From Octopus sinensis (lineage: Eukaryota): a stretch of 35,773 nucleotides of DNA. Both the position numbers and the translations under genes were made by a program. The stretch covers positions 1-35,773 of the forward strand of contig NW_021835824.1 of assembly GCF_006345805.1 (NCBI RefSeq), read 5' to 3'. Shown here piece after piece: positions 8,647 through 35,773 of the stretch; within the stretch, counting starts at the first letter, position 1; each line of letters starts with the position of its first letter. The notes below the pieces were generated by a model, which ran no database searches, was not told the DNA's origin, and worked only from the letters and a program-made list of their open reading frames with translations.

Positions 8647-11600
8647 GACAAAACACAGTAGAAGACTTCTAATGAAGATACAAGTCTCAAAACACGGTAC
8701 AAGACTTCTGATGAAGATACAAGACTCAAAACACGGTACAAGACTTCTAATGAAGATACAAGACTCAAAACACGGTTCAAGACTTCTAATGAAGATACAA
8801 GACTCAAAACACGGTTCAAGACTTCTAATGAAGATACAAGACTCAAAACACGGTACAAGACTTCTAATGAAGATACAAGACTCAAAACACGGTACAAGAC
8901 TTCTAATGAAGATACAAGACTCAAAACACGGTACAAGACTTCTAATGAAGATAGAAGACTCAAAACACGGTACAAGACTTCTAATGAAGATACAAGACTC
9001 AAAACACGGTACAAGACTTCTAATGAAGATACAAGACTCAAAACACGGTACAAGACTTCTAATGAAGATACAAGACTCAAAACACGGTTCAAGACTTCTA
9101 ATGAAGATACAAGACTCAAAACACGGTTCAAGACTTCTAATGAAGATACAAGACTCAAAACACGGTTCAAGACTTCTAATGAAGATACAAGACTCAAAAC
9201 ACGGTTCAAGACTTCTAATGAAGATACAAGACTCAAAACACGGTACAAGACTTCTAATGAAGATACAAGACTCAAAACACGGTACAAGACTTCTAATGAA
9301 GATACAAGACTCAAAACACGGTACAAGACTTCTAATGAAGATACAAGACTCAAAACACGGTTCAAGACTTCTAATGAAGATACAAGACTCAAAACACGTT
9401 CAAGACTTCTAATGAAGATACAAGACTCAAAACACGGTTCAAGACTTCTAATGAAGATACAAGACTCAAAACACGGTTCAAGACTTCTAATGAAGATACA
9501 AGACTCAAAACACGGTTCAAGACTTCTAATGAAGATACAAGACTCAAAACACGGTTCAAGACTTCTAATGAAGATACAAGACTCAAAACACGGTTCAAGA
9601 CTTCTAATGAAGATACAAGACTCAAAACACGGTTCAAGACTTCTAATGAAGATACAAGTCTCAAAACACGGTACAAGACTTCTAATGAAGATACAAGACT
9701 CAAAACACGGTACAAGACTTCTAATGAAGATACAAGACTCAAAACACGGTACAAGACTTCTGATGAAGATACAAGACTCAAAACACGGTACAAGACTTCT
9801 AATGAAGATACAAGACTCAAAACACGGTACAAGACTTCTGATGAAGATACAAGACTCAAAACACGGTACAAGACTTCTAATGAAGATACAAGACTCAAAA
9901 CACGGTACAAGACTTCTAATGAAGATACAAGACTCAAAACACGGTACAAGACTTCTAATGAAGATACAAGACTCAAAACACGGTTCAAGACTTCTAATGA
10001 AGATACAAGACTCAAAACACGGTACAAGACTTCTAATGAAGATACAACACTCAAAACACGGTACAAAACTTCTAATGAAGATACAAGACTCAAAACACGG
10101 TACAAGACTTCTAATGAAGATACAAGACTCAAAACACGGTTCAAGACTTCTAATGAAGATACAAGACTCAAAACACGGTTCAAGACTTCTAATGAAGATA
10201 CAAGACTCAAAACACGGTTCAAGACTTCTAATGAAGATACAAAACTCAAAACACGGTTCAAGACTTCTAATGAAGATACAAGACTCAAAACACGGTTCAA
10301 GACTTCTAATGAAGATACAAGACTCAAAACACGGTTCAAGACTTCTAATGAAGATACAAGACTCAAAACACGGTTCAAGACTTCTGATGAAGATACAAGT
10401 CTCAAAACACGGTACAAGACTTCTAATGAAGATACAAGACTCAAAACACGGTACAAGACTTCTAATGAAGATACAAGACTCAAAACACGGTACAAGACTT
10501 CTGATGAAGATACAAGACTCAAACACGGTACAGACTTCTAATGAAGATACAAGACTCAAAACACGGTACAAGACTTCTGATGAAGATACAAGACTCAAAA
10601 CACGGTACAAGACTTCTAATGAAGATACAAGACTCAAAACACGGTAAACAAGACTTCTAATGAAGATACAAGACTCAAAACACGGTACAAGACTTCTAAT
10701 GAAGATACAAGACTCAAAACACGGTACAAGACTTCTAATGAAGATACAAGACTCAAAACACGGTACAAAACTTCTAATGAAGATACAAGACTCAAAACAC
10801 GGTACAAGACTTCTAATGAAGATACAAGACTCAAAACACGGTACAAGACTTCTAATGAAGATACAAGACTCAAAACAACACGGTACAAGACTTCTAATGA
10901 AGATACAAGACTCAAAACACGGTACAAGACTTCTAATGAAGATACAAGACTCAAAACACGGTACAAGACTTCTAATGAAGATACATGACTCAAAACACGG
11001 TACAAGACTTCTAATGAAGATACAAGACTCAAAACACGGTACAAGACTTCTAATGAGATACAAGACTCAAAACACGGTACAAGACTTCTATGAAGATACA
11101 AGACTCAAAACACGGTACAAGACTTCTAATGAAGATACAAACTCAAAACACGGTACAAGACTTCTAATGAAGATACAAGACTCAAAACACGGTACAAGAC
11201 TTCTAATGAAGATACAAACTCAAACACGTACACAAGACTTCTAATGAAGATACAAGACTCAAAACACGGTACAAGACTTCTAATGAAGATACAGACTCAA
11301 AACACGGTACAAGACTTCTGATGAAGATACAAGTCTCAAAACACTGTACAAGACTTCTAATGAAGATACAAGACTCAAAACACGGTACAAGACTTCTAAT
11401 GAAGATACAAGACTCAAAACACGGTACAAGACTTCTAATGAAGATACAAGACTCAAAACACGGTACAAGACTTCTAATGAAGATACAAGACTCAAACCAC
11501 GGTACAAGACTTCTAATGAAGATACAGACTCAAAACACGGTACAAGACTTCTAATGAAGATACAAGACTCAAAACACGGTACAAGACTTCTAATGAAGAT

Positions 11601-12847
11601 ACAAGACTCAAAACACGGTACAAGACTTCTGATGAAGATACAAGTCTCAAAACACGGTACAAGACTTCTAATGAAGATACAAGACTCAAAACACGGTACA
11701 AGACTTCTAATGAAGATACAAGACTCAAAACACGGTACAAGACTTCTAATGAAGATACAAGACTCAAAACACGGTACAAGACTTCTAATGAAGATACAAG
11801 ACTCAAAACACGGTACAAGACTTCTAATGAAGATACAAGACTCAAAACACGGTTCAAGACTTCTAATGAAGATACAAGACTCAAAACACGGTACAAGACT
11901 TCTAATGAAGATACAAGACTCAAAACACGGTACAAAACTTCTAATGAAGATACAAGACTCAAAACACGGTACAAGACTTCTAATGAAGATACAAGACTCA
12001 AAACACGGTACAAGACTTCTAATGAAGATACAAGACTCAAAACACGGTACAAGACTTCTAATGAAGATACAAGACTCAAAACACGGTACAAGAATTCTAA
12101 TGAAGATACAAGACTCAAAACACGGTACAAGACTTCTAATGAAGATACAAGACTCAAAACACGGTACAAGACTTCTAATGAAGATACAAGACTCAAAACA
12201 CGGTACAAGACTTCTAATGAAGATACAAGACTCAAAACACGGTACAAGACTTCTAATGAAGATACATGACTCAAAACACGGTACAAGACTTCTAATGAAG
12301 ATACAAGACTCAAAACACGGTACAAGACTTCTAATGAAGATACAAGACTCAAAACACGGTACAAGACTTCTAATGAAGATACAAGACTCAAAACACGGTA
12401 CAAGACTTCTAATGAAGATACAAGACTCAAAACACGGTACAAGACTTCTAATGAAGATACAAGACTCAAAACACGGTACAAGACTTCTAATGAAGATACA
12501 AGACTCAAAACACGGTACAAGACTTCTGATGAAGATACAAGTCTCAAAACACGGTACAAGACTTCTAATGAAGATACAAGACTCAAAACACGGTACAAGA
12601 CTTCTAATGAAGATACAAGACTCAAAACACGGTACAAGACTTCTAATGAAGATACAAGACTCAAAACACGGTACAAGACTTCTAATGAAGATACAAGACT
12701 CAAAACACGGTACAAGACTTCTAATGAAGATACAAGACTCAAAACACGGTACAAGACTTCTAATGAAGATACAAGACTCAAAACACGGTACAAGACTTCT
12801 AATGAAGATACAAGACTCGAAACACGGTACAATACTTCTGATGACGG
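8647..12847 (+). repeat. 39-bp tandem satellite, about 108 units
   Basis: Unit aagacttctaatgaagatacaagactcaaaacacggt(a/t)c, repeated with few substitutions and occasional indels. Confidence 0.98.
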
Positions 12848-13048
12848 TACATGGCCACAATCAAATAACTAAAACAAGTAAAACGAAATAAAATAAAATA
12901 AAATAAATATCATCCTCTTCATAGTTGACGAGGTCATCGTTGTCATTGTGTTTGTCGTCAACGCCACCACTGCTCTCGTGGTCGCCATTATTTTTATGCT
13001 TGCTTTGCAACAGCTCAACCCTGTATTAGATACATGTATATATTATGA

Positions 13049-13770
13049 TAGATAATCTATCCTAAAGTCTCAGCTATTATTTCGTGAATTTATCATTCGC
13101 TTTGAACTTAATTATAGCATCCAGCTGTCCGGTATTTTCTTCCAGTATTTCTTTGTGGAGGCGCAATGGCCCAGTGGTTAGGGCAGCGGACTCGCGGTCG
13201 TAGGATCGCGGTTTCGATTCCCAGACCGGGCGTTGTGAGTGTTTATTGAACGAAAACACCTAAAAGCTCCACGAGGTTCCGGCAGGGAATGGTGGTGATC
13301 CCTGCTGTACTCTTTCACCACAACTTTCTCTCTCACTCTTTCTTCCTGTTTCTGTTGTACCTGTATTTCAAGGGGCCGGCCTTGTCACTCTCTGTGTCAC
13401 GCTGAATATCCCCGAGAACTACGTTAAGGGTGCACGTGTCTGTGGAGTACTCAGCCACCTATACGTTAATTTCACGAGCAGGCTGTTCCGTTGATTCGGA
13501 TCAACCGGAACCCTCATCGTCGTAACCGACGGAGTGCTTCCATCCTTCCATTTTCTTCCAATATTCGATATATGTCGGGAATGAAGTGATCCATTTCTAT
13601 TGTTTCTTTCCGCTGCGATCAATCACCGCTACAGATCGATCTGTTGATAAGTGGTAATCACATCACAATAAAGCAGAACAGCCGATATCCAAATGGTTGG
13701 ATTTTCAGTCTCAGCTAATTGATCTGTAGCTAATTTGTCCATCGCAAATAGCACCAGGTCGCTATTGTTT
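13049..13770. repeat. Unclassified ~310-bp repeat (family G), interrupted by SINE-C
   Basis: Collinear with 21253-21560 once 13150-13549 is removed. Confidence 0.8.
13155..13542 (+). mobile_element. SINE-C, full length with a 16-bp TSD
   Basis: attttcttcca(g/a)tatt at 13134-13149 and 13550-13565; the empty site is visible in the paralogue near 21340. Confidence 0.92.
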
Positions 13771-14243
13771 CTGTCAACAAGTAGAAAAGCACTCGATCAG
13801 CTAAGAGAGTGAAGATAATCTTGAAATATAAAATCACTAATCTTTGCAATAACAGTTCCCCAGGGTTTTCTGGTCGAAATAATAATCTGTTCAACCATTT
13901 ATCAAGCTGAAAGCAAGACCGTCTGTCAGTTTTTTTTGTTTTTGAGTAGATAACGTTTAAACAAGAATCACTCGTAAAGAAGAAAAGAAGACAAGAAGAA
14001 AAGCACAATGGAGATATCTAACGTTACAATAATTCGATGTCAACCAGATGTTAATGGTTTACTAAGTGTCCGGGTTCTATTTTTAAATTCCGACAAAAAA
14101 ATATTTCTTGAAAGGCGGACATAAAGAAAAAAATCTCGTTCCTCGAATTTATGTATTCATTGAGGTTCTCAAGTTTTTCTAGCGAACACAGTGAAGAGTT
14201 TTTTAGACCCGTTAATGCAGGAGGCGCAGGCGTGGCTGTAAAA

Positions 14244-17153: not shown

Positions 17154-17344
17154 GTAAGTAGCGACTGTTATTAACGGGTGGAGCTGGAAGGACGAACGTT
17201 TTTGAAAAATTAAGAAAATCATTAATTTTTGCTGCAAACAAATTTTATTGACACCAAATGTGTTCGTATTGAATTAGTATTTGTCAAAATCAAACTTGAA
17301 AAACATCATTTATCATGTGGTGTCCGTTTTCATTGATGCATGTG

Positions 17345-17580
17345 TATGTGTGTGCGTAGATGTATGTGTGTCTGCGTTTGCACCCCACCCCACCCCACCA
17401 CTATCGGTTGATAACCGATGTTGGTATGTTTACGTCCCCGTAATTTAGCGGTTCGGCAAAAAAGATACCGATAGGATGACTACTAGTCTTTACAAAATAC
17501 AAGTCCTGCGGTCGATATGTTCGACTAAAAGGCGGTGCTCCAGCGTGGTCACAGTCAAATGGCTGAAACATATAAAAGAA
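17345..17580 (+). mobile_element. Diverged SINE-A 3' module
   Basis: Shares diagnostic variants (ccactatcggttg, aagataccgataggatga) with 215-440. Confidence 0.8.
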
Positions 17581-17591
17581 TAAAAAGCATA

Positions 17592-17992
17592 GCGCAGGAG
17601 TGGCTGTGTGGTAAATAGCTTGCTTACCAACCACATGGTTCCGGGTTCAGTCCCACTGCGTGGCATCTTGGGCAAGTGTCTTCTACTATAGTCTCGGGCC
17701 GACCAATGCCTTGTGAGTGGATTTGGTAGACGGAAACTGAAAAGAAGCCCGTCGTATATATGTATATATATATGTGTGTGTATGTGTGTTTGTGTGTCTG
17801 TGTTTGTCCCCCTAGCGTTGCTTGACAACCGATGCTGGTGTGTTTATGTCCCCGTTACTTAGCGGTTCGGCAAAAGAGACCGATAGAATAAGTACTGGGC
17901 TTACAAAAAGAATAAGTCCCGGGGTCGATTTGCTCGATTAAAGGCGGTGCTCCAGCATGGCCGCAGTCAAATGACTGAAACAAGTAAAAGAG
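17592..17992 (+). mobile_element. SINE-A, full length with a 20-bp TSD
   Basis: taaaagaataaaaagcatag at 17573-17592 and 17993-18012. Confidence 0.9.
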
Positions 17993-18061
17993 TAAAAGAA
18001 TAAAAAGCATAGATAGATACAGATATGGATATTTACCCCCTTTTGTTCTTGGAAATTGGCA

Positions 18062-18410
18062 TTGCCCTGTCGATTTGGGCGACTTCCACGCGAATAGGTT
18101 CCCTCAAACGGTTCAATGTTCGGGGCTTATGCACATACACACGTGCCTTGAGGTTTCTCCGCAAGAAATAATCACACATGGACAAATCAGGGGATCAAGG
18201 AGGCCAAGGAATGTCAGCAAACCTGGAAATGAAGCGGTCGCCGAAGAGAGGGCTGAAGAGCGTCCATTGATGCTCCGGCTGTGTGGGCCGGGTGTAAATG
18301 CAGGTCTTCATGAAAAATACACCTTACCGATCGATTACCGATGCCAAGTTCAGTGGAATGCCTCCGAACAGAGCGATTCGGATTCCGTATCAAAGCTTCG
18401 CGTTTGCCTC
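18062..18410 (-). pseudogene. Tc1/mariner-superfamily transposase fragment (HTH end, internal deletion, catalytic C-terminus)
   Basis: Minus strand reads ALIRNPNRSVRRHSTELGIGNRSVRCIFHEDLHLHP, then FGDRFISRFADIPWPP*SPDLSMCDYFLRRNLKARVY. This matches the WPPRSPDL motif with a CGA>TGA stop at 18195-18197. Confidence 0.85.
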
Positions 18411-18414
18411 TTTC

Positions 18415-18829
18415 TCTTTCTCTTTTCTCTTTTACTTGTTTCAGTCATTTGACTGCGGCCATGCTGGAGCACCGCCTTTAGTCGAGCAAATCGACCCCGG
18501 GACTTATTCTTTGTAAGCCCAGTACTTATTCTATCGGTCTCTTTTTGCCGAACCGCTAAGTGACGGGGACGTAAACACACCAGCATCGGTTGTCAAGCAA
18601 TGCTAGGGGGACAAACACAGAGACACAAGCACAGACACACATACATATATATATATACATATATACGACAGGCTTCTTTCAGTTTCCGTCTACCAAATCC
18701 ACTCACAAGGCATTGGTCGGCCCGGGGCTATAGCAGAAGACACTTGCCCAAGATGCCACACAGTGGGACTGAACCCGAAACCATGAGGTTGGTTAGCAAG
18801 CTACTTACCACACAGCCACTCCTGCGCCT
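18415..18829 (-). mobile_element. SINE-A, full length
   Basis: Reverse complement of the consensus; the head ends at cctgcgcc. Confidence 0.9.
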
Positions 18830-19110
18830 ACGACACTTACGTGAAGAACAACGAGTCTGTCGTCACAGCAGCTCAGCGTGAGTTTCGGCGCCACTTCAAC
18901 ATTCACCGAAATCAGGCTGTTCCCACCCGTAACACAATCTTACGTTGGTTGAATGCACTTCGTACACGAGGTACGCTAATGAATAGGAGACTGGTGGGGG
19001 AACCCCGAATAGTACGGATCCCGGAAAATGCGGAACGCGTCAGGCAAGCTTTGATACGGTGTCCGAATCGCTCTACTCGGAGGCATTCCACTGAAGTTGC
19101 AGTTCGTGTT
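18830..19110 (+). pseudogene. Tc1/mariner transposase N-terminal HTH fragment (DUF4817-like)
   Basis: YDTYVKNNESVVTAAQREFRRHFNIHRNQAVPTRNTILRWLNALRTRGTL..ENAERVRQALIRCPNRSTRRHS. Confidence 0.8.
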
Positions 19111-19161
19111 TAAAGGCGACTAACTTAAATTCTCATATCAACAGTTCCTTAGACTTTAGAT

Positions 19162-21249
19162 CAGTGGTTTTCAACAAGGGTTCCGCGGAACCTTAGGGTT
19201 CCGCCAGTACAGTCCAGGGGTTCCGCAAGAAGTTACAAAAATGCTAAAATCGACAGTAATTTTTAATTTTCCTGTGCAGATATGTGTGCATAAGACTATT
19301 AAATTATTGCACAGGGGTTCCTCGAGCCAGTGGAATGTTTCCTTGGGGGTTCCGCTCCAGCAAAAATATTGAAAAGCACTGGTCTAACTAGTGTCTAACT
19401 CAGTGGTTTTCAACCAGGGTTCCGCCAGTACAGTCCAGGGGTTCCGCAAGAAGTTACAAAAATGCTAAAATCGACAGTAATTTTTAATTCTCCTGTGCAG
19501 ATATGTGTGCATATAAGACAATTAAATTATTGCACAGGGGTTCCTCGAACCAGTGGAATGTTTCCTTGGGGTTCCGCTCCAGCAAAAATATTGAAAAGCA
19601 CTGATCTAACTAGTGTCTATCTAACTCAGTGGTTTTCAACCAGAGTTCCGCCAGTACAGTCCAGGGGTTCCGCAAGAAGTTACAAAACTGCTAAAATCGG
19701 CAGTAATTTTTAATTCTCCTGTGCAAATATGTGTGCATAAGACAATTAAATTATTGCACAGGGATTCCTCGAGCCAGTGGAATGTTTCCTTGGGGTTCCA
19801 CTCCAGCAAAAAGGTTGAAAAGCACTGGTCTAACTAGTGTCTAACTGACTGTGTCTAGCTCAGTGGTTTTCAACCAGGGTTCCATGGAACCTTAGGGTTC
19901 CGCCAGTACAGTCCAGGGGTTCCGCAAGAAGTTACAAAAATGCTAAAATCGACAGTAATTTTTAATTTTCCTGTGCAGATATGTGTGCATAAGACTATTA
20001 AATTATTGCACAGGGGTTCCTCGAGCCAGTGGAATGTTTCCTTGGGGGTTCCGCTCCAGCAAAAATATTGAAAAGCACTGGTCTAACTAGTGTCTAACTC
20101 AGTGGTTTTCAACCAGGGTTCCGCCAGTACAGTCCAGGGGTTCCGCAAGAAGTTACAAAAATGCTAAAATCGACAGTAATTTTTAATTCACCAGTGCAGA
20201 TGTGTGTGTATAAGACTATTAAATTTTTGCACAGGGGTTCCTCGAGCCAGTGGAATGTTTCCTTGGGGTTCCGCTCCAGCAAAAAGATTGAAAAGCACTG
20301 GTCTAACTAGTGTCTAACTGATTGTGTCTAACTCAGTGGTTTTCAACCAAGGTTCTGCCAGTACAGTCCAGGGGTTCCGCAAGAAGTTACAAAACTGCTA
20401 AAATCGGCAGTAATTTTTAATTCACCAGTGCAGATGTGTGTGTATAAGACTATTAAATTTTTGCACAGGGGTTCCTCGAGCCAGTGGAATGTTTCCTTGG
20501 GGTTCCGCTCCAGCAAAAATATTGAAAAGCACTGGTCTAACTAGTGTCTATCTAACTCAGTGGTTTTCAACCAGAGTTCCGCCAGTACAGTCCAGGGGTT
20601 CCGCAAGAAGTTACAAAAACGCTAAAATCGACAGTAATTTTTAATTCTCCTGTCGAGATATGTGTGCATATAAGACAATTAAATTATTGCACAGGGGTTC
20701 CTCGAGCCAGTGGAATGTTTCCTTGGGGTTCCACTCCAGCAAAAAGGTTGAAAAGCACTGGTCTAACTAGTGTCTAACTGACTGTGTTTAGCTCAGTGGT
20801 TTTCAACCAGGGTTCCGTGGAACCTTAGGGTTCCGCCAGTACAGTCCAGTGGTTCCGCAAGAAGTTACAAAAATGCTAAAATCGACAGTAATTTTTAATT
20901 CTCCTGTGCAGATATGTGTGCATATAAGACAATTAAATTATTGCACAGGGGTTCCTCGAGCCAGTGGAATGTTTCCTTGGGGTTCCGCCCCAGCAAAAAG
21001 ATTGAAAAGCACTGGTCTAACTAGTGTCTAACTGATTGTGTCTAACTCAGTGGTTTTCAACCAGGGTTCTGCCAGTACAGTCCAGGGGTTCCGCAAGAAG
21101 TTACAAAACTGCTAAAATCGGCAGTAATTTTTAATTCACCAGTGCAGATGTGTGTGTATAAGACTATTAAATTTTTGCACAGGGGGTTCCTCGAGCCAGT
21201 GGAATGTTTCCTTGGGGTTCAGCTCCAGCAAAAAGGTTGAAAAGCACTG
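19162..21249. mobile_element. Tandem array of nine hAT/Charlie-type MITE units (~200-220 bp each)
   Basis: Each unit has TIRs cagtggttttcaacc / (gg)ttgaaaagcactg. Unit starts are 19162, 19401, 19627, 19861, 20100, 20334, 20558, 20794 and 21048. The 8-bp TSD ctttagat is at 19154-19161 and 21250-21257. Confidence 0.9.
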
Positions 21250-21252
21250 CTT

Positions 21253-21560
21253 TAGATAATCTATCCTAAAGTCTCAGCTAGTATTTCGTGAAGTTATCAT
21301 TCGCTTTGAACTTAATTATATACATTCAGCTGTCCGGTATTTTCTCCCAATATTCGATATATATCGGGAATGAAGTGATCTATTTCTAATGTTTCTTTCC
21401 GCTGCGATCAATCACCGCTACAGATCGAACTGTTGATAAGTGGCAATCACATCACAATAAAACAGAACAGCCGATATCCAAATGGTTGGATTTTCAGTCT
21501 CAGCTAATTGCTCTTTAGCTAATTAGTCCATCGCAAATAGCACCAGGTCGCTATTGTGTC
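21253..21560. repeat. Unclassified repeat family G, uninterrupted copy
   Basis: Collinear with 13049-13770. Confidence 0.8.
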
Positions 21561-21727
21561 TATTGATTCGTTTGTTAACTGTTATCTGGTGTAATTGTTT
21601 AGTTGTGTCGATGGTGAAGTTCTGTTTGAATTTTATCGTTAACTGTGTTTTCAGTTGTTTATAATCATGGATCTGTTCTGTCTGTTCGGAATTGGGTCGT
21701 TTAACCGCAGCATATTTATCTTGATAC

Positions 21728-22477
21728 TTATTTCTTTATTGCCCACAAGGGGCTAAACACAGAGGGGACAAACATGGACAGACATAGGTATTAAGTCGAT
21801 TACATCGACCCCAGTGCGTAACTGGTACTTAATTTATCGACCCCGAAAGGATGAAAGGCAAAGTCAACCTCGGCGGAATTTGAACTCACAACGTAACGGC
21901 AGACGAAATATCTATTTCTTTATTACCCACAAGGGGCTAAACACAGAGGGGACAAACAAGGACAGACATAGGTATTAAGTCGATTACATCGACCCCAGTG
22001 CGTAACTGGTACTTAATTTATCGACCCCAAAAGGACGAAAGGCAAAGTCGACCTCGGCGGAATTTGAACTCACAACGTAACGCAGACGAAATACCGCTAA
22101 GCATTTCGCCCGGCGTGCTAACGTTTCTGCAAGCTCGCCGCCTTTAATACCTATTTCTTTATTACCTACAAGGGGCTAAACATAGAGGGGACAAACAAGG
22201 ACAGACATAGGTATTAAGTCGATTACATCGACCCCAGTGCGTAACTGGTACTTTATTTATCGACCCCGAAAGGATGAAAGGCAAAATCGACCTCGGCGGA
22301 ATTTGAACTCACAACGTAGCGGCAGACGAAATACCTATTTCTTTATTACCCACAAGGGGCTAAACATAGGTGGGACAAACAAGGACAGACATGGGTATTA
22401 AGTCGATTACATCGACCCCAGTGCGTAACTGGTACTTAATTTATCGACCCCGAAAGGATGAACAGCAAAGTCGACCT
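21728..22477 (-). mobile_element. SINE-B head-to-tail multimer (four units, one with a head)
   Basis: Tail-to-internal junctions near 21910 and 22335, and a tail-to-head junction near 22145. Confidence 0.9.
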
Positions 22478-22824: not shown

Positions 22825-23479
22825 GTGGAGGCGCAATGGCCCAGTGGTTAGGGCAGCGGACTCGCGGTCATAGGATCGCGGTTTCGATTCCCAGACCGGG
22901 CGTTGTGAGTGTTTATTGAGTGAAACACCTAAAAGCTCCACGAGGCTCCGGCAGGGGATGGTGGTGATCCCTGCTGTACTCTTTCACCACAACTTTCTCT
23001 CACTCTTACTTCCTGTTTCTGTTGTACCTGTATTTCAAAGGGGCCGGCCTTGTCACTCTCTGTGTCACGCTGAATATCCCCGAGAACTGCGTTAAGGGTA
23101 CACGTGTCTGTGGAGTGCTCAGCCACTTACACGTTTATTTCACGAGCAGGCTGTTCCGTTGATTCGGATCAACCGGAACCCTCGTCGTCGTAACCAACTG
23201 AGTGCTTACATCCGAGGCTCTGGCAGGGGATGGTGGTGATCCCTGCTGTACTCTTTCACCACAACTTTCTCTCACTCTTACTTCCTGTTTCTCTTGTACC
23301 TGTATTTCAAAAGGGCCGGCCTTGTCACTTTCTGTGTCACGCTGAATATCCCCGAGAACTACGTTAAGGGTGCACGTGTCTGTGGAGTGCTCAGCCACTT
23401 ACACGTTAATTTCACGAGCAGGCTGTTCCGTTGATTCGGATCAACCGGAACCCTCGTCGTCGTAACCGACGGAGTGCTT
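22825..23479 (+). mobile_element. SINE-C dimer (full copy plus headless copy)
   Basis: Junction aaccaactgagtgcttacatc|cgaggctc at ~23195-23220. Confidence 0.9.
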
Positions 23480-25420: not shown

Positions 25421-25455
25421 TATGATTCCAGTCTCCAGAAAGCCATAAACGGTAT

Positions 25456-25968
25456 GGGAGACCGGAAGACAAGTTTAATGTGATCCACCCTAGAAAAGAG
25501 GGTACCCTGTAACTATCATATACTCTCCCTTCGGTCGACTCCCTAGTGTCATCCAACAATACCAGAGACCTTAGAGTAATTGTTGATAACAATCTAAGCT
25601 GGAGTTCCCACGTAAACAGCAAGGTTGGGAGACCAGAAGATAAGTTTAATGGGATCCACTCTAGAAAAGAGGGTACTCTGTAACTATCATATACTCTCCC
25701 CTCGGTCGACTCCCTAGTGTCATCCAACAACACCAGAGACCTTAGAGTAATTGTTGATAACAATCTAAGCTGGAGTTCCCACGTAAACAGCAAGGTTGGG
25801 AGACCAGAAGATAAGTTTAATGGGATCCACTCTAGAAAAGAGGGTACTCTGTAACTATCATATACTCTCCCCTCGGTCGACTCCCTAGTGTCATCCAACA
25901 ACACCAGAGACCTTAGAGTAATTGTTGATAACAATCTAAGCTGGAGTTCCCACGTAAACAGCAAGGTT
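25456..25968 (+). repeat. Three tandem 171-bp units inside the LINE
   Basis: Units at 25456-25626, 25627-25797 and 25798-25968. Confidence 0.95.
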
Positions 25969-26375
25969 GACTTGGCCCGCAAAATGTGTTCTTGGATTCT
26001 GAGAACTTTCCGGTCTAGAGATGCCCACACGATCATCCTTCTCTACTCTACTTTTGTCCGACCCCACCTTGAATACTGTTGCTCACCGTGGTCTCCCCAT
26101 ACGAAGCAACTCATTAATGAAAGTGGAAGCACTCCAGAAAGATAGACGGGAGGACAGGCATTGACTATCGGGGTTGACTAAAATCACTCAATCTCTACAT
26201 CATTTGTGTGACGTGGATAATATTCCATCAATACTTCACAAATGATGTTGTCATCAATTTTAAAATCCACCCATGACTTGACCCACGTGCTACTCGCCCA
26301 CTTCAAATATCGAACCCAGGACACATAACAACGCTACGTCACAATTACCTTATGTCAACCAGTCCAGCTCTCTTT

Positions 26376-26614
26376 AATACCTATTTCTTTATTACCCACA
26401 AGGGGCTAAACGTAGAGGGGACAAACAAGGACAGACATAGGTATTAAGTCGATTACATCGACCCCAGTGCGTAACTGGTACTTAATTTATCGACCCCGAA
26501 AGGATGAAAGGTAAAGTCGACCTCGGCGGAATTTGAACTCAGAATGTAACGACAGACGAAATACCGCTAGGCATTTCGCCCGGCGTGCTAACGTTTCTGC
26601 CAGCTCTCCGCCTT
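26376..26614 (-). mobile_element. SINE-B, full length, nested in the LINE 3' region
   Basis: The empty site ctctctttaataccataccaaaa is visible in the paralogue at ~28988-29010. Confidence 0.92.
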
Positions 26615-32746: not shown

Positions 32747-33424
32747 TTTTCACCCAAGAGCAGAGGATAAATAAATGAAAGCAATTCTTTAATAAATATT
32801 AGGTTGTCCCAAAAGTTCGTAAACACTTGCGAAAATTGAATTTTTACTCGCCAAGTACTAACAAAAACAACAAAAATTATTCCTCAAAATAAAGACCATT
32901 ATTTTCAAAGACTTTCTACGAACTTTTGGGACAACCTTATATAAACCAAAATTAAATAGGAAAACGTGTGCAATTAGTCAACAAATAAGGATTTATAGAC
33001 TACACTCCCTTATCACTTTACTGCGAGTTTGTGATTGTTAAACTCTTTCTAAAAACGGAGAATTTCTTGTATAAATGATTTAACTTTTCACCCAAGAGCA
33101 GAGGATAAATAAATGAAAGCAATTCTTTAATAAATATTAGGTTGTCCCAAAAGTTCGTAAACACTTGCGAAAATTGAATTTTTACTCGCCAAGTACTAAC
33201 AAAAACAACAAAAATTATTCCTCAAAATAAAGACCATTATTTTCAAAGACTTTCTACGAACTTTTGGGACAATCTTATATAAACCAAAATTAAATAGGAA
33301 AACGTGTGCAATTAGTCAACAAATAAGGATTTATAGACTACACTACCTTATCACTTTACTGCGAGTTTGTGATTGTTAAACTATTTCTAAAAACGGAGAA
33401 TTTCTTGTATAAATGATTTAACTT
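32747..33424. repeat. 338-bp tandem duplication, each unit containing a 141-bp mariner-type MITE
   Basis: MITEs at 32799-32939 and 33137-33277 with TIR ttaggttgtcccaaaagttcgta and TA flanks; I count three differences between units. Confidence 0.9.
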
Positions 33425-33446: not shown

Positions 33447-34110
33447 GCGCGGAGGCGCAATGGTCCAGTGGTTAGGGCAGCGGACTCGCGGTCGTAGGAT
33501 CGCGGTTTCGATTCCCAGACCGGGCGTTGTGAGTGTTTATTGAGCGAAAACACCTAAAAGCTCCACGAGGCTCCGGCAGGGGATGGTGGTGATCCCTGCT
33601 GTACTCTTTCACCACAACTTTCTCTCTCACTCTTACTTCCTGTTTCTCTTGTACCTGTATTTTTAAAAGGGCCGGCCTTGTCACTCTCTGTGTCACGCTG
33701 AATATCCCCGAGAACTACGTTAAGGGTACACGTGTCTGTGGAGTGCTCAGCCATTTATACGTTAATTTCACGAGCAGGCTGTTCCGTTGATTCGGATCAA
33801 CCGGAACCCTCGTCGTCGTAACCAACTGAGTGCTTCCATCCGAGGCTCCGGCAGGGGATGGTGGTGATCCCTGCTGTACTCTTTCACCACAACTTTCTCT
33901 CACTCTTACTTCCTGTTTCTGTTGTACCTGTATTTTCAAAAGGGCGGGCCTTTTCACTCTCTGTGTCACGCTGAATATCCCCGACAACTACGTTAAGGGT
34001 ACACGCGTCTGCGGAGTGCTCAGCCACTTACACGTTAATTTCACGAGTAGGCTGTTCCGTCGATTCGGATCAACCGGAACCCTCGTCGTCTAACCGACGG
34101 AGTGCTTCCA
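33447..34110 (+). mobile_element. SINE-C dimer with TSD
   Basis: Same junction as 22825-23479; atgtgtac(g/a)cgc on both sides. Confidence 0.9.
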
Positions 34111-34131
34111 TGTGTACACGCCCGAACTCAC

Positions 34132-35140: not shown

Positions 35141-35773
35141 TCTATTATATAAAATCCGTTCTGTGTGTGTGTGTGTGTCTTCTAGGATCTCGGGCATCCT
35201 CCATCCGATTGCGCTCAAATTTGATATGTAGATACCGACGGTATCAAGGCGGCGAGCTGGCAGAACCGTTAGCACGTCGGGCGAAATGCTCATCAGTATT
35301 TCATCTGTCACTACGTTCTGAGTTCAAATTCCGCCGAGGTCGACTTTGCCTTTCATCCTTTCGGGGTCGATTAAATAAGTACCAGTTACGCACTGGGGTC
35401 GATATGATCGACTTAATCCGTTTGTACGTCCTTGTTTGTCCTCTCTTTGTTTAGCCCCTTGTGGGTAGTAAAGAAATAGGTATCAGGGCGTGTATAAGTC
35501 TTGAAAAAATTACAAAAATCGATTCCAGGTGAGAATGCGATCGATAAAGTGAATAAAATCGTTTTTCTTTGGAATAGAAAAAAAAGTCTATCTTTATTTC
35601 TTCTTTTTCTGGTGTCTCAAATCAGTGTTTCTCAAAGGGGAAACCTATGGGATAATCGGACAAGTCGTTTTGATAAATTTCTCAAAGGGGAAGCCTATGG
35701 GATGATCGGACAAGTCGTTTTGAGAAAATTTGGTTTAAATGTTTGACAACTCAGCACCGTCCATTGGACGGGG
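35141..35773 (+). mobile_element. Non-autonomous Helitron-like element, 3' end probably just beyond the window
   Basis: A|TCTATTATATAAAA start followed by (GT)n; 50-bp internal tandem repeat at 35628-35727; GC hairpin ccgtcc-att-ggacgg at 35757-35771. Confidence 0.6.
35247..35483 (+). mobile_element. SINE-B, full length, nested in the Helitron
   Basis: TSD ggtatca at 35240-35246 and 35479-35485. Confidence 0.92.

What the first reader, a model, noticed from the sequence alone, without database searches (positions are those of the whole stretch)
19154..21257. Nine-unit hAT MITE array that appears to have transposed as one macro-element
Seen: all nine units have their own TIRs, but only the outer ends carry the perfect 8-bp TSD CTTTAGAT. 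Every internal junction is instead a 19-33-bp spacer that begins and ends with a different 8-mer, GTCTAACT or a close variant (e.g. cactg-gtctaact-agt-gtctaact-cagtgg). Long units (1, 4, 8, with the ggttcc-gc-ggaacc palindrome) and spacer types recur, so the array has higher-order structure. Known: hAT elements make 8-bp TSDs. Inference: the array formed at a donor locus whose target was GTCTAACT and was then cut and pasted here by its outermost TIRs. That would make it a satellite travelling as a DNA transposon.
Basis: partly seen in the sequence, partly recalled or inferred. Interest (0 to 1): 0.7.

Follow-up and report, generated by a model that had tools for sequence, protein, structure and literature searches.

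The report
Tandem hAT MITE array, probably transposed
Nine head-to-tail copies of a small hAT-type transposon sit inside one 8-bp target duplication, while their internal joints carry a different duplicated 8-mer; so a ready-made multimer was most likely moved here as one element, a known kind of event (macrotransposition) not previously shown for a MITE array.

Summary
Observation confirmed. Window 19162-21249 holds nine head-to-tail copies (201-221 bp, 91.5-98.6% identical) of a non-coding element with 13-14-bp terminal inverted repeats. The block is bracketed by a perfect 8-bp direct repeat, CTTTAGAT, found nowhere else in the window. The eight internal joints are 19, 23 or 33-bp spacers built from a different 8-mer, GTCTAACT.

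The ends match SPIN/Charlie-type hAT transposons. Both 8-mers fit that group's published target, NYYTARRN. Related elements in 27 metagenome contigs include copies with 8-bp duplications.

Growth in place from one or two insertions predicts CTTTAGAT at the joints. It is absent, so at least one joint was imported. Best reading (about 0.55): a multimer formed at a GTCTAACT site elsewhere, and transposase moved it here using ends of different monomers, as with maize Ac macrotransposons.

How many units moved cannot be told. Four joint types each occur twice, and a 304-bp tract recurs exactly three units away, so the array also turns over by exchange or conversion.

I found no donor, second array or empty allele, because the source genome is in no searchable collection. 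Main rival: a solo insertion enlarged by ectopic conversion. Verdict: new variant of known kinds, moderate interest.

The parts
19154..19161 (.). Left copy of the outer 8-bp target-site duplication, CTTTAGAT
   Evidence: It abuts the first left end. It is one of only two copies in the window. It fits NYYTARRN at 6 of 6 specified positions.
19162..19381 (+). Unit 1, long form (220 bp). Palindrome GGTTCCGCGGAACC at 19179-19192.
   Evidence: 98.6% identical to unit 4.
19382..19400 (+). Spacer 1 (19 bp): GTCTAACT-AGT-GTCTAACT
   Evidence: Identical to spacer 4.
19401..19603 (+). Unit 2, short form (203 bp)
19604..19626 (+). Spacer 2 (23 bp): ATCTAACT-AGT-GTCTA-TCTAACT. This is the 19-mer plus a TCTA duplication.
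   Evidence: Same type as spacer 6.
19627..19827 (+). Unit 3, short form (201 bp)
   Evidence: Closest to unit 7 (96.5%).
19828..19860 (+). Spacer 3 (33 bp): GTCTAACT-AGT-GTCTAACT-GACTGT-GTCTAGCT
   Evidence: Same type as spacer 7.
19861..20080 (+). Unit 4, long form (220 bp). Palindrome GGTTCCATGGAACC at 19878-19891.
20081..20099 (+). Spacer 4 (19 bp): GTCTAACT-AGT-GTCTAACT
20100..20300 (+). Unit 5, short form (201 bp)
   Evidence: Groups with units 6 and 9 (97.5%).
20301..20333 (+). Spacer 5 (33 bp): GTCTAACT-AGT-GTCTAACT-GATTGT-GTCTAACT
   Evidence: Identical to spacer 8.
20334..20534 (+). Unit 6, short form (201 bp)
   Evidence: 98.0% identical to unit 9.
20535..20557 (+). Spacer 6 (23 bp): GTCTAACT-AGT-GTCTA-TCTAACT
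20558..20760 (+). Unit 7, short form (203 bp)
20761..20793 (+). Spacer 7 (33 bp): GTCTAACT-AGT-GTCTAACT-GACTGT-GTTTAGCT
20794..21014 (+). Unit 8, long form (221 bp). Palindrome GGTTCCGTGGAACC at 20811-20824.
21015..21047 (+). Spacer 8 (33 bp): GTCTAACT-AGT-GTCTAACT-GATTGT-GTCTAACT
21048..21249 (+). Unit 9, short form (202 bp)
21250..21257 (.). Right copy of the outer 8-bp target-site duplication, CTTTAGAT
19187..19490 (+). 304-bp tract exactly identical to 19886-20189, at an offset of 699 bp (three units). It marks a recent conversion or exchange within the array.
   Evidence: It is the longest exact internal repeat; the next longest is 121 bp.
21253..21561 (+). Right-flank repeat X. Its other copy in the window (13049-13149 plus 13550-13772, 93-95% identical) begins at the same TAGATAATC and carries a single TAGAT. 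It therefore serves as a partial (right-half) empty site.

Best explanation
The block is a composite non-autonomous hAT transposon: a head-to-tail multimer of one SPIN/Charlie-like MITE.

Shown:
- Every monomer keeps both terminal inverted repeats and four or five subterminal GGTTCC copies (most in the GGGTTCCGC form), the likely transposase-binding sites.
- Every internal monomer is flanked by direct copies of GTCTAACT.
- Only the outermost ends are flanked by CTTTAGAT.

Inferred history:
1. One founder MITE inserted at a GTCTAACT target elsewhere in the genome.
2. The founder was duplicated in tandem together with both copies of its target duplication and three extra bases, giving the ancestral joint GTCTAACT-AGT-GTCTAACT. 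One route is microhomology or slippage duplication. The other is two insertions into a hAT excision footprint. AGT is the reverse complement of the preceding ACT, as a hairpin-derived footprint would give.
3. Unequal exchange and gene conversion expanded and diversified the array. Small slippage events turned the 19-bp joint into the 23-bp and 33-bp forms.
4. A transposase supplied in trans paired a left end and a right end from different monomers. It excised a multimer and integrated it at CTTTAGAT, at the edge of repeat X, making the 8-bp duplication.
5. Exchange and conversion continued, either here or just before the move, so the number of units that actually moved (two to nine) is unknown.
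For: - hAT identity. The outer duplication is exactly 8 bp. The left end CAGTGGTTTTCAACC matches the published SPIN / hAT-N1 inverted repeat CAGTGGTTCTCAACC at 14 of 15 bases, and that group's target is NYYTARRN (PMC3014272). CTTTAGAT fits 6 of 6 specified positions, as do 0.3-0.4% of background 8-mers. GTCTAACT fits 5 of 6, as do 4.5%.
- The ends are real transposon ends. 27 metagenome contigs carry the same 23-nt terminus on related 230-700-bp elements that share the first ~65 and last ~35 bp. One insertion has a perfect 8-bp duplication, two have 7 of 8, and one has 6 of 8. Fourteen independent left flanks fit NYYTARRN at 61 of 84 positions against about 36 expected, with resampling P < 1e-5.
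- Subterminal motif. GGTTCC occurs at 15.8 per kb in the array against 0.3 per kb elsewhere in the window.
- Formation in place is contradicted. Double insertion or slippage at this site puts the site's own duplication in the joint. The hobo array, with one 8-nt motif at every joint, is the example (PMC5932611). Here the joint 8-mer differs from the outer one at 4 of 8 positions.
- The mechanism exists. Ac macrotransposons bounded by one 5' and one 3' end excise and reinsert with 8-bp duplications (PMC9910405).
- Array turnover. Four joint types occur in pairs, and there is an exact 304-bp tract at a three-unit offset.
Against: - This is a single locus. The window holds no other copy of the MITE, even in an nhmmer search at E<=10.
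- No donor, second array, GTCTAACT-flanked solo copy or empty allele could be looked for. The source genome is absent from the protein and contig collections, and the element's internal 22-mer has no match in metagenome or prokaryote contigs.
- No tail-to-head joints were seen among the relatives.
- No autonomous hAT transposase is linked to these ends, either in the window or in the related contigs.
- Invariance of the inverted repeats within the array is only weakly unusual: 0 of 27 columns vary against 25 of 174 inside the units (P = 0.02), and four internal invariant runs are as long or longer. So there is no clear sign of selection for mobility.
- Ectopic conversion into a solo copy would leave the same final sequence.
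Confidence: 0.55

Rival explanations
1. Solo insertion enlarged by ectopic conversion. A single MITE inserted at CTTTAGAT. Later a break inside it was repaired by synthesis-dependent strand annealing, using as template an array of the same family elsewhere in the genome. That copied several units and their GTCTAACT joints between the resident ends.
For: It gives exactly the observed end state: outer duplication from the solo insertion, foreign joints inside. The array clearly undergoes conversion-like events, shown by the 304-bp exact tract flanked by diverged sequence. Unit 1 has a private base at alignment column 14 and a private centre to its palindrome. That is compatible with a resident left end.
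Against: It still needs a pre-existing array with GTCTAACT joints elsewhere, so it does not remove the unseen donor. Ectopic repair is generally rarer than transposition for an element with intact ends (general knowledge, not tested here). Unit 9's right half is 97.6% identical to unit 5's, so the right end is not a visibly older resident.
Confidence: 0.2
2. Rolling-circle concatemer. Recombination between two units of a donor dimer released a circle of one unit plus one spacer. Rolling-circle replication made a concatemer, and transposase cut a multimer out of it and integrated it here.
For: Rolling-circle replication is a standard proposal for arrays of complete transposons (PMC5932611, PMC12628747). 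It would explain why every joint begins with the same 16 bases.
Against: A fresh concatemer should be homogeneous. Here units differ by up to 8.5% and there are four joint types in a fixed order. The diversity would all have to be later than the insertion.
Confidence: 0.08
3. Assembly artefact. The copy number or order of units, or the array itself, was produced by mis-assembly of a repeated family.
For: Short tandem arrays are error-prone. The exact 304-bp duplicate inside otherwise 2-8% diverged units could be a polishing or collapse artefact.
Against: Units differ at 25 substitution columns plus indels in a consistent mosaic. Joint types covary perfectly with the 3' dinucleotide of the preceding unit and with the 5' type of the following unit. 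Both boundaries are exact to the base, with an 8-bp duplication.
Confidence: 0.07
4. Array built in place. Repeated insertion into the same target (double insertion), or slippage duplication of a solo MITE, at this very site.
For: This is the documented origin of P-element and hobo dimers and of a 13-19-copy hobo array.
Against: It predicts one copy of the site's own duplication (CTTTAGAT) at each joint. The joints instead hold two or three copies of GTCTAACT, which differs from the outer 8-mer at 4 of 8 positions. CTTTAGAT occurs only at the two outer edges.
Confidence: 0.03

Closest known systems
Ac/Ds macrotransposons of maize (Huang & Dooner 2008; Wang et al. 2022; cited in PMC9910405)
   Same: Same hAT superfamily. 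One 5' end and one 3' end from different, directly oriented elements are used together. Everything between them moves, and the new site gains an 8-bp duplication.
   Different: In maize the ends belong to two Ac/fAc copies separated by kilobases of host DNA, and the events were seen experimentally. Here the cargo is nothing but further copies of the same MITE with 19-33-bp remnants of an old target, and the event is inferred from one locus.
Transposon dimers and arrays formed by double insertion, including a 13-19-copy hobo array (McGurk & Barbash 2018, PMC5932611)
   Same: Head-to-tail arrays of complete hAT elements with target-duplication sequence at the joints, later expanded by unequal exchange.
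   Different: In that model each joint holds one 8-mer, and it is the target of the locus where the array sits. Here each joint holds two or three copies of an 8-mer that is not the local target.
SPIN / hAT-N1-type non-autonomous hAT elements (Novick et al. 2011, PMC3014272)
   Same: The inverted repeat matches at 14 of 15 bases. The duplication is 8 bp and fits NYYTARRN. The elements are short and non-coding.
   Different: Those families are described as dispersed single copies in vertebrates. The internal sequence here is unrelated as far as could be tested, and no transposase partner was found.
Tandem arrays of full-size MITEs in corals (CMITE, piggyBac-type; Wang et al. 2010, PMC2872659)
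   Same: Complete MITEs repeated in tandem, with similar sequences between the copies. Replication slippage was proposed as the origin.
   Different: A different superfamily (TTAA targets). No contrast between inner and outer duplications was reported, and movement of an array was not proposed.
MITEs and Helentrons that carry internal tandem repeats (Xstir, miDNA4, clam and oyster elements; review PMC12628747)
   Same: Tandem repeats are dispersed around a genome because they lie between transposon ends.
   Different: In those elements the repeated unit is an internal segment without its own ends. Here each repeat unit is a whole MITE with both ends, so any left-right pair could in principle define a mobile sub-array.
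Tandem accumulations of hAT-derived MITEs at Atlantic cod inversion breakpoints (PMC12368964)
   Same: hAT-derived MITE sequence in kilobase-scale tandem arrangement.
   Different: Those repeats are partial or inverted segments of long terminal repeats. Target duplications were not analysed.

Membership tests
hAT superfamily (non-autonomous member) | 8-bp target-site duplication | tested here: met
   CTTTAGAT, exactly 8 bp, lies at both outer edges. Related elements in metagenome contigs show 8/8, 7/8, 7/8 and 6/8 duplications.
hAT superfamily (non-autonomous member) | Short terminal inverted repeats beginning CAG or TAG and matching a known hAT lineage | tested here: met
   The 13-14-bp repeat CAGTGGTTTTCAAC pairs with CAGTGCTTTTCAA(C/T). 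It matches the published SPIN / hAT-N1 repeat at 14 of 15 bases.
hAT superfamily (non-autonomous member) | Target preference of the lineage (NYYTARRN for SPIN-like elements) | tested here: met
   The outer 8-mer fits 6/6 and the inner 8-mer 5/6. Fourteen flanks of relatives fit 61/84 against about 36 expected, P < 1e-5.
hAT superfamily (non-autonomous member) | An autonomous partner encoding a hAT transposase with the same ends | not testable with these tools
   There is no hAT domain in the window ORFs tested. The 27 related contigs hold no long ORF. The source genome is not searchable.
MITE | Small, non-coding, with terminal inverted repeats and a target duplication | tested here: met
   Units are 201-221 bp. 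Only short ORFs occur in the array, the longest being 83 aa and spanning a joint. A 57-aa unit ORF has no protein homologue.
MITE | High copy number of dispersed, homogeneous copies | not testable with these tools
   No copy lies outside the array in 35.8 kb. Genome-wide copy number is unknown.
Macrotransposon / composite transposon | The outer duplication flanks the whole composite, and internal element ends lack that duplication | tested here: met
   CTTTAGAT occurs only at 19154 and 21250. All 16 internal end flanks carry GTCTAACT-type 8-mers.
Macrotransposon / composite transposon | Direct evidence of movement: an empty site, a donor footprint or a second copy | not testable with these tools
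   Only a partial paralogous empty site exists. The copy of repeat X at 13049 carries a single TAGAT. No donor or allele data are available.
Array formed by double insertion in place (McGurk & Barbash model) | Each joint holds one copy of the local target duplication | tested here: not met
   The joints hold two or three copies of a different 8-mer plus filler.
Satellite DNA | Head-to-tail repeats with higher-order structure and concerted evolution | tested here: met
   Periods 234 and 473. Paired joint types. A 304-bp exact tract.
Satellite DNA | Long arrays or high genomic abundance | not testable with these tools
   Only one 2.1-kb array is visible.

The most novel reading that the evidence does not exclude
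The family is a self-dispersing satellite. Every monomer keeps working ends, so transposase can cut out any sub-array, from one left end to any later right end, and seed new arrays of variable length at new NYYTARRN sites. All such arrays would carry the same fossil GTCTAACT-AGT-GTCTAACT joint but different outer duplications. This would be a direct, enzyme-driven route for spreading a satellite 'library' through a genome. The 33-bp joints, with three copies of the 8-mer, could then be healed scars of monomers excised from inside the array.
Probability: 0.3. Interest if true: 0.7.

Novelty: new variant of a known kind. Interest (0 to 1): 0.45.

Why it matters
How satellite repeats appear at many unlinked places in a genome is an old question. 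The usual answers are unequal exchange, extrachromosomal circles, or capture of a repeat inside a transposon. An array whose repeat unit is itself a complete MITE, and which carries one target duplication outside and a different one inside, would be physical evidence that a tandem array can be relocated by ordinary cut-and-paste transposition.

It also matters for genome stability. Each joint places a right end and a left end 19-33 bp apart in 'reversed' orientation. In maize that arrangement is the substrate for alternative transposition, which produces deletions, inversions and duplications.

The claim is cheap to test once the genome is available, because a single k-mer search for the joint sequence settles most of it.

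Tried and rejected
1. Other copies in the window. BLAST and an nhmmer profile of the nine units found none outside the array.

2. The source genome or other individuals.
- Exact look-ups of three window ORFs, including one inside the array, found nothing.
- Protein searches with a reverse-transcriptase fragment and with an array ORF found nothing.
- The flanking DUF4817 ORF found only 49-77% relatives. Their contigs (L001-L010) lack the MITE and the window's SINEs, so they come from other species.

3. Collection scans. An internal 22-mer gave no match in metagenome or prokaryote contigs. The 23-nt terminus gave 27 metagenome contigs but none in prokaryote or viral contigs.

4. Arrays among the relatives. 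No tail-to-head joints within 80 bp were found, only one nested insertion in L026.

5. A transposase partner. The related contigs hold no long ORF.

6. Selection on the inverted repeats within the array. The signal is weak (P = 0.02, and internal invariant runs are as long), so I do not use it as evidence.

7. RNA genes. Rfam and tRNA scans of the window found none.

8. Rejected reading: the 8-mers are part of longer inverted repeats. They are direct, not inverted.

9. Rejected reading: the inversion breakpoint at 19099/19100 was made by the array's ends. It lies 54 bp from the array's target duplication (62 bp from the first left end), not at an element end.

10. The filler GACTGT / GATTGT in the 33-bp joints could not be explained cleanly as hairpin-derived nucleotides. 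It is best read as the 19-mer plus an imperfect 14-bp duplication, or as two joints fused with the loss of 5 bp.
Full report
**What is there**

Reading 18900-21500 and locating the ends by pattern shows nine head-to-tail units between 19162 and 21249.
- Each unit starts CAGTGGTTTTCAAC and ends (A/G)TTGAAAAGCACTG. The two ends are inverted repeats agreeing at 12-13 of 14 bases.
- Units are 201-203 bp, or 220-221 bp in units 1, 4 and 8. The long units carry an extra 18 bp with the palindrome GGTTCC-NN-GGAACC.
- Pairwise identity is 91.5-98.6%.
- Tandem Repeats Finder reports periods of 234 and 473 bp.
- The units contain only short ORFs, and a 57-aa ORF from one unit has no protein homologue.

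The block is bracketed by CTTTAGAT at 19154-19161 and 21250-21257. These are the only two copies of that 8-mer on either strand of the window, and the repeat is exactly 8 bp long.

The eight internal joints are 19, 23, 33, 19, 33, 23, 33 and 33 bp. All begin (G/A)TCTAACTAGTGTCTA and end with GTCTAACT or a near variant. GTCTAACT occurs 15 times in the window, all inside the array.

**What kind of element it is**

A published table of lizard DNA transposons lists the hAT families SPIN, SPIN_NA1 and hAT-N1. Their inverted repeats are CAGYGGTTCTCAACCT and CAGTGGTTCTCAACCTGTGG, and their 8-bp target is NYYTARRN (PMC3014272).
- The left end here matches at 14 of 15 bases.
- CTTTAGAT fits the target consensus at all six specified positions, as do 0.3-0.4% of background 8-mers.
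- GTCTAACT fits at five of six, as do about 4.5%.

A scan of public metagenome contigs with the 23-nt terminus returned 27 contigs, apparently contaminating host DNA, since the same insertions recur across samples.
- They carry related non-coding elements of about 230-700 bp. These share the first ~65 bp, including the palindrome, and the last ~35 bp with the long form here.
- One element has a perfect 8-bp duplication (CTGTAGAG), two have 7 of 8, and one has 6 of 8.
- The 14 independent left flanks fit NYYTARRN at 61 of 84 positions against about 36 expected, with P < 1e-5.

The motif GGTTCC (mostly as GGGTTCCGC) occurs four or five times per unit, which is 15.8 per kb against 0.3 per kb elsewhere in the window. 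It behaves like the subterminal transposase-binding repeats of hAT elements.

So the termini are genuine ends of a widespread SPIN/Charlie-like hAT lineage, and the long form is the ancestral one. No transposase partner could be linked to them.

**Why the joints matter**

Each internal unit is flanked by direct copies of GTCTAACT, exactly as a target duplication would look. The shortest joint is GTCTAACT-AGT-GTCTAACT.
- The 23-mer is this joint plus a TCTA duplication.
- The 33-mers are this joint plus an imperfect 14-bp repeat.
- The 19-mer is therefore most simply the ancestral joint, modified later by slippage. This is inference.

Models that build an array at the site where it lies are double insertion into the target duplication, and slippage between the two duplication copies. 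Both place the local 8-mer in the joint. This is documented for P-element dimers and for a 13-19-copy hobo array with one 8-nt motif at every joint (PMC5932611). Here the joint 8-mer differs from the outer one at four of eight positions, and the outer one never appears inside. Formation in place from an insertion at CTTTAGAT is therefore contradicted. At least one joint, meaning two or more units, was imported.

**Most likely mechanism**

hAT transposase acts on any correctly oriented left-right pair of ends. In maize, Ac ends from separate elements move the intervening DNA as a macrotransposon, which excises and reinserts with 8-bp duplications (PMC9910405). A multimer of this MITE offers such pairs. 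Excision by ends of different monomers, followed by integration at CTTTAGAT, gives the observed structure without further assumptions.

The insertion point lies at the edge of repeat X. The other copy of X in the window (13049-13149 and 13550-13772, 93-95% identical) starts at TAGATAATC with a single TAGAT. It acts as a right-half empty site.

How the first dimer arose at the donor is not shown. There are two candidates.
- Microhomology-mediated tandem duplication of [8-mer - MITE - 8-mer - AGT].
- Two insertions into a hAT excision footprint. hAT excision leaves hairpinned flanks that are rejoined with footprints (PMC5499845). AGT is the reverse complement of the preceding ACT, as a hairpin-derived addition would be. 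By chance this is expected about 1 time in 32, so it is only a lead.

**How much moved**

This cannot be decided from one locus.
- Segments centred on the joints fall into four types, each present twice, in the order a b c a d b c d.
- The 3' dinucleotide of each unit and the 5' type of the next unit covary perfectly with spacer type.
- A 304-bp tract (19187-19490) is exactly identical to 19886-20189, three units away, while the sequence on either side is diverged. That looks like a recent conversion tract rather than a simple unequal crossover, which would leave at least two identical units.

The array therefore evolves as a small satellite. A dimer or short oligomer could have landed and expanded here, or the diversity could predate the move. 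The perfect outer duplication does not date the event: at the observed divergence, roughly half of such 16-base pairs would still be intact.

**Rivals**
- Solo insertion enlarged by ectopic conversion. A solo MITE at CTTTAGAT, enlarged by repair from an array elsewhere, gives the same sequence. This cannot be excluded (confidence about 0.2), and it still needs the unseen donor array.
- Rolling-circle concatemer. A fresh concatemer should be homogeneous, which this array is not.
- Assembly artefact. The consistent mosaic of variants and the base-exact boundaries argue against it, but only spanning reads can settle it.
- Selection on the inverted repeats. Their invariance within the array (0 of 27 columns against 25 of 174, P = 0.02) is not distinctive, because internal invariant runs are as long.

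**What could not be done**

The source genome is absent from every searchable collection (16, 17, 22, 23). The decisive tests were therefore out of reach: other arrays with the same joint and different outer duplications, a GTCTAACT donor, and an empty or solo allele. Among the relatives in metagenome contigs no tail-to-head joints occur.

**Comparison with what is known, and verdict**

All of the following are already known:
- tandem arrays of complete MITEs;
- arrays of hAT elements;
- adjacent or nested MITE multimers;
- MITEs or Helentrons that disperse internal tandem repeats;
- hAT macrotransposition.

I did not find a described case of an array of whole MITEs whose inner and outer target duplications differ, which is the signature that the multimer itself was relocated. 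I rate this a new variant of known kinds. It is moderately interesting (0.45), resting on one locus and easily testable with the genome in hand.

Each joint also forms a 13-bp inverted repeat around a 19-33-nt loop (z = -4 to -5). It places 'reversed' ends close together, a known substrate for transposase-induced rearrangement.

Noticed in passing
window 13049-13772 and 21253-21561: Repeat X has two copies, 93-95% identical. The homology of the second copy begins at TAGATAATC, within 5 bp of the point where the array is inserted in the first copy. So the array sits exactly at the edge of X, or both copies broke at the same small palindrome AGACTTTAG-N10-CTAAAGTCT. The second copy is interrupted at 13150-13549 by a 400-bp repeat with a tRNA-like head, here called S2.
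   Followed up: partly
window 22825-23479 and 33451-34111: The 400-bp SINE-like repeat S2 occurs at two separate loci in the same 'full copy plus partial copy (positions 123-394)' head-to-tail form. This internally duplicated variant seems to have spread as a unit.
   Followed up: partly
window 21729-22477; also 6387-7069, 26382-26563, 35297-35478: A 184-bp interspersed repeat forms a four-copy tandem array only about 470 bp downstream of the MITE array, and a two-copy array at 6699-7069. Short tandem multimers of dispersed repeats are common in this window. Other examples are a 166-bp unit x3.9 at 4255-4904, a 171-bp unit x3 at 25455-25969, and a 338-bp unit x2 at 99% identity at 32747-33424.
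   Followed up: partly
window 8649-12851: A 4.2-kb minisatellite: 108 copies of a 39-bp unit (CAAAACACGGTACAAGACTTCTAATGAAGATACAAGACT) with 97% matches.
   Followed up: no
window 17176-19099: A DUF4817 helix-turn-helix transposon remnant (ORF 18841-19113) is rearranged relative to its relative in contig L001. Part is in reverse orientation (17176-18398) and part is forward (18826-19099). A 54-bp segment is present in both (18345-18398 and 19046-19099), and an inserted SINE lies between them. The breakpoint at 19099/19100 lies 54 bp from the array's target duplication.
   Followed up: partly
window 19118-19125: GACTAACT, a 7 of 8 match to the joint 8-mer GTCTAACT, lies about 30 bp left of the array. 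This is probably chance, at roughly 4% for a match that good in the 54-bp flank.
   Followed up: no
window 19185-19186, 19884-19885, 20817-20818: The centre of the long-form palindrome reads GC, AT and GT in units 1, 4 and 8, and is similarly variable in the metagenome relatives. The pattern fits CpG-to-TpG/CpA decay, suggesting the element is methylated.
   Followed up: no
L026 1020-1743; also L011, L022, L027, L036: In the related metagenome contigs, one element is nested inside another of the same lineage (L026; the inner copy has a 7 of 8 duplication). The same 701-bp insertion with duplication CTGTAGAG recurs in four different samples, which indicates host genomic DNA rather than microbial sequence.
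   Followed up: partly
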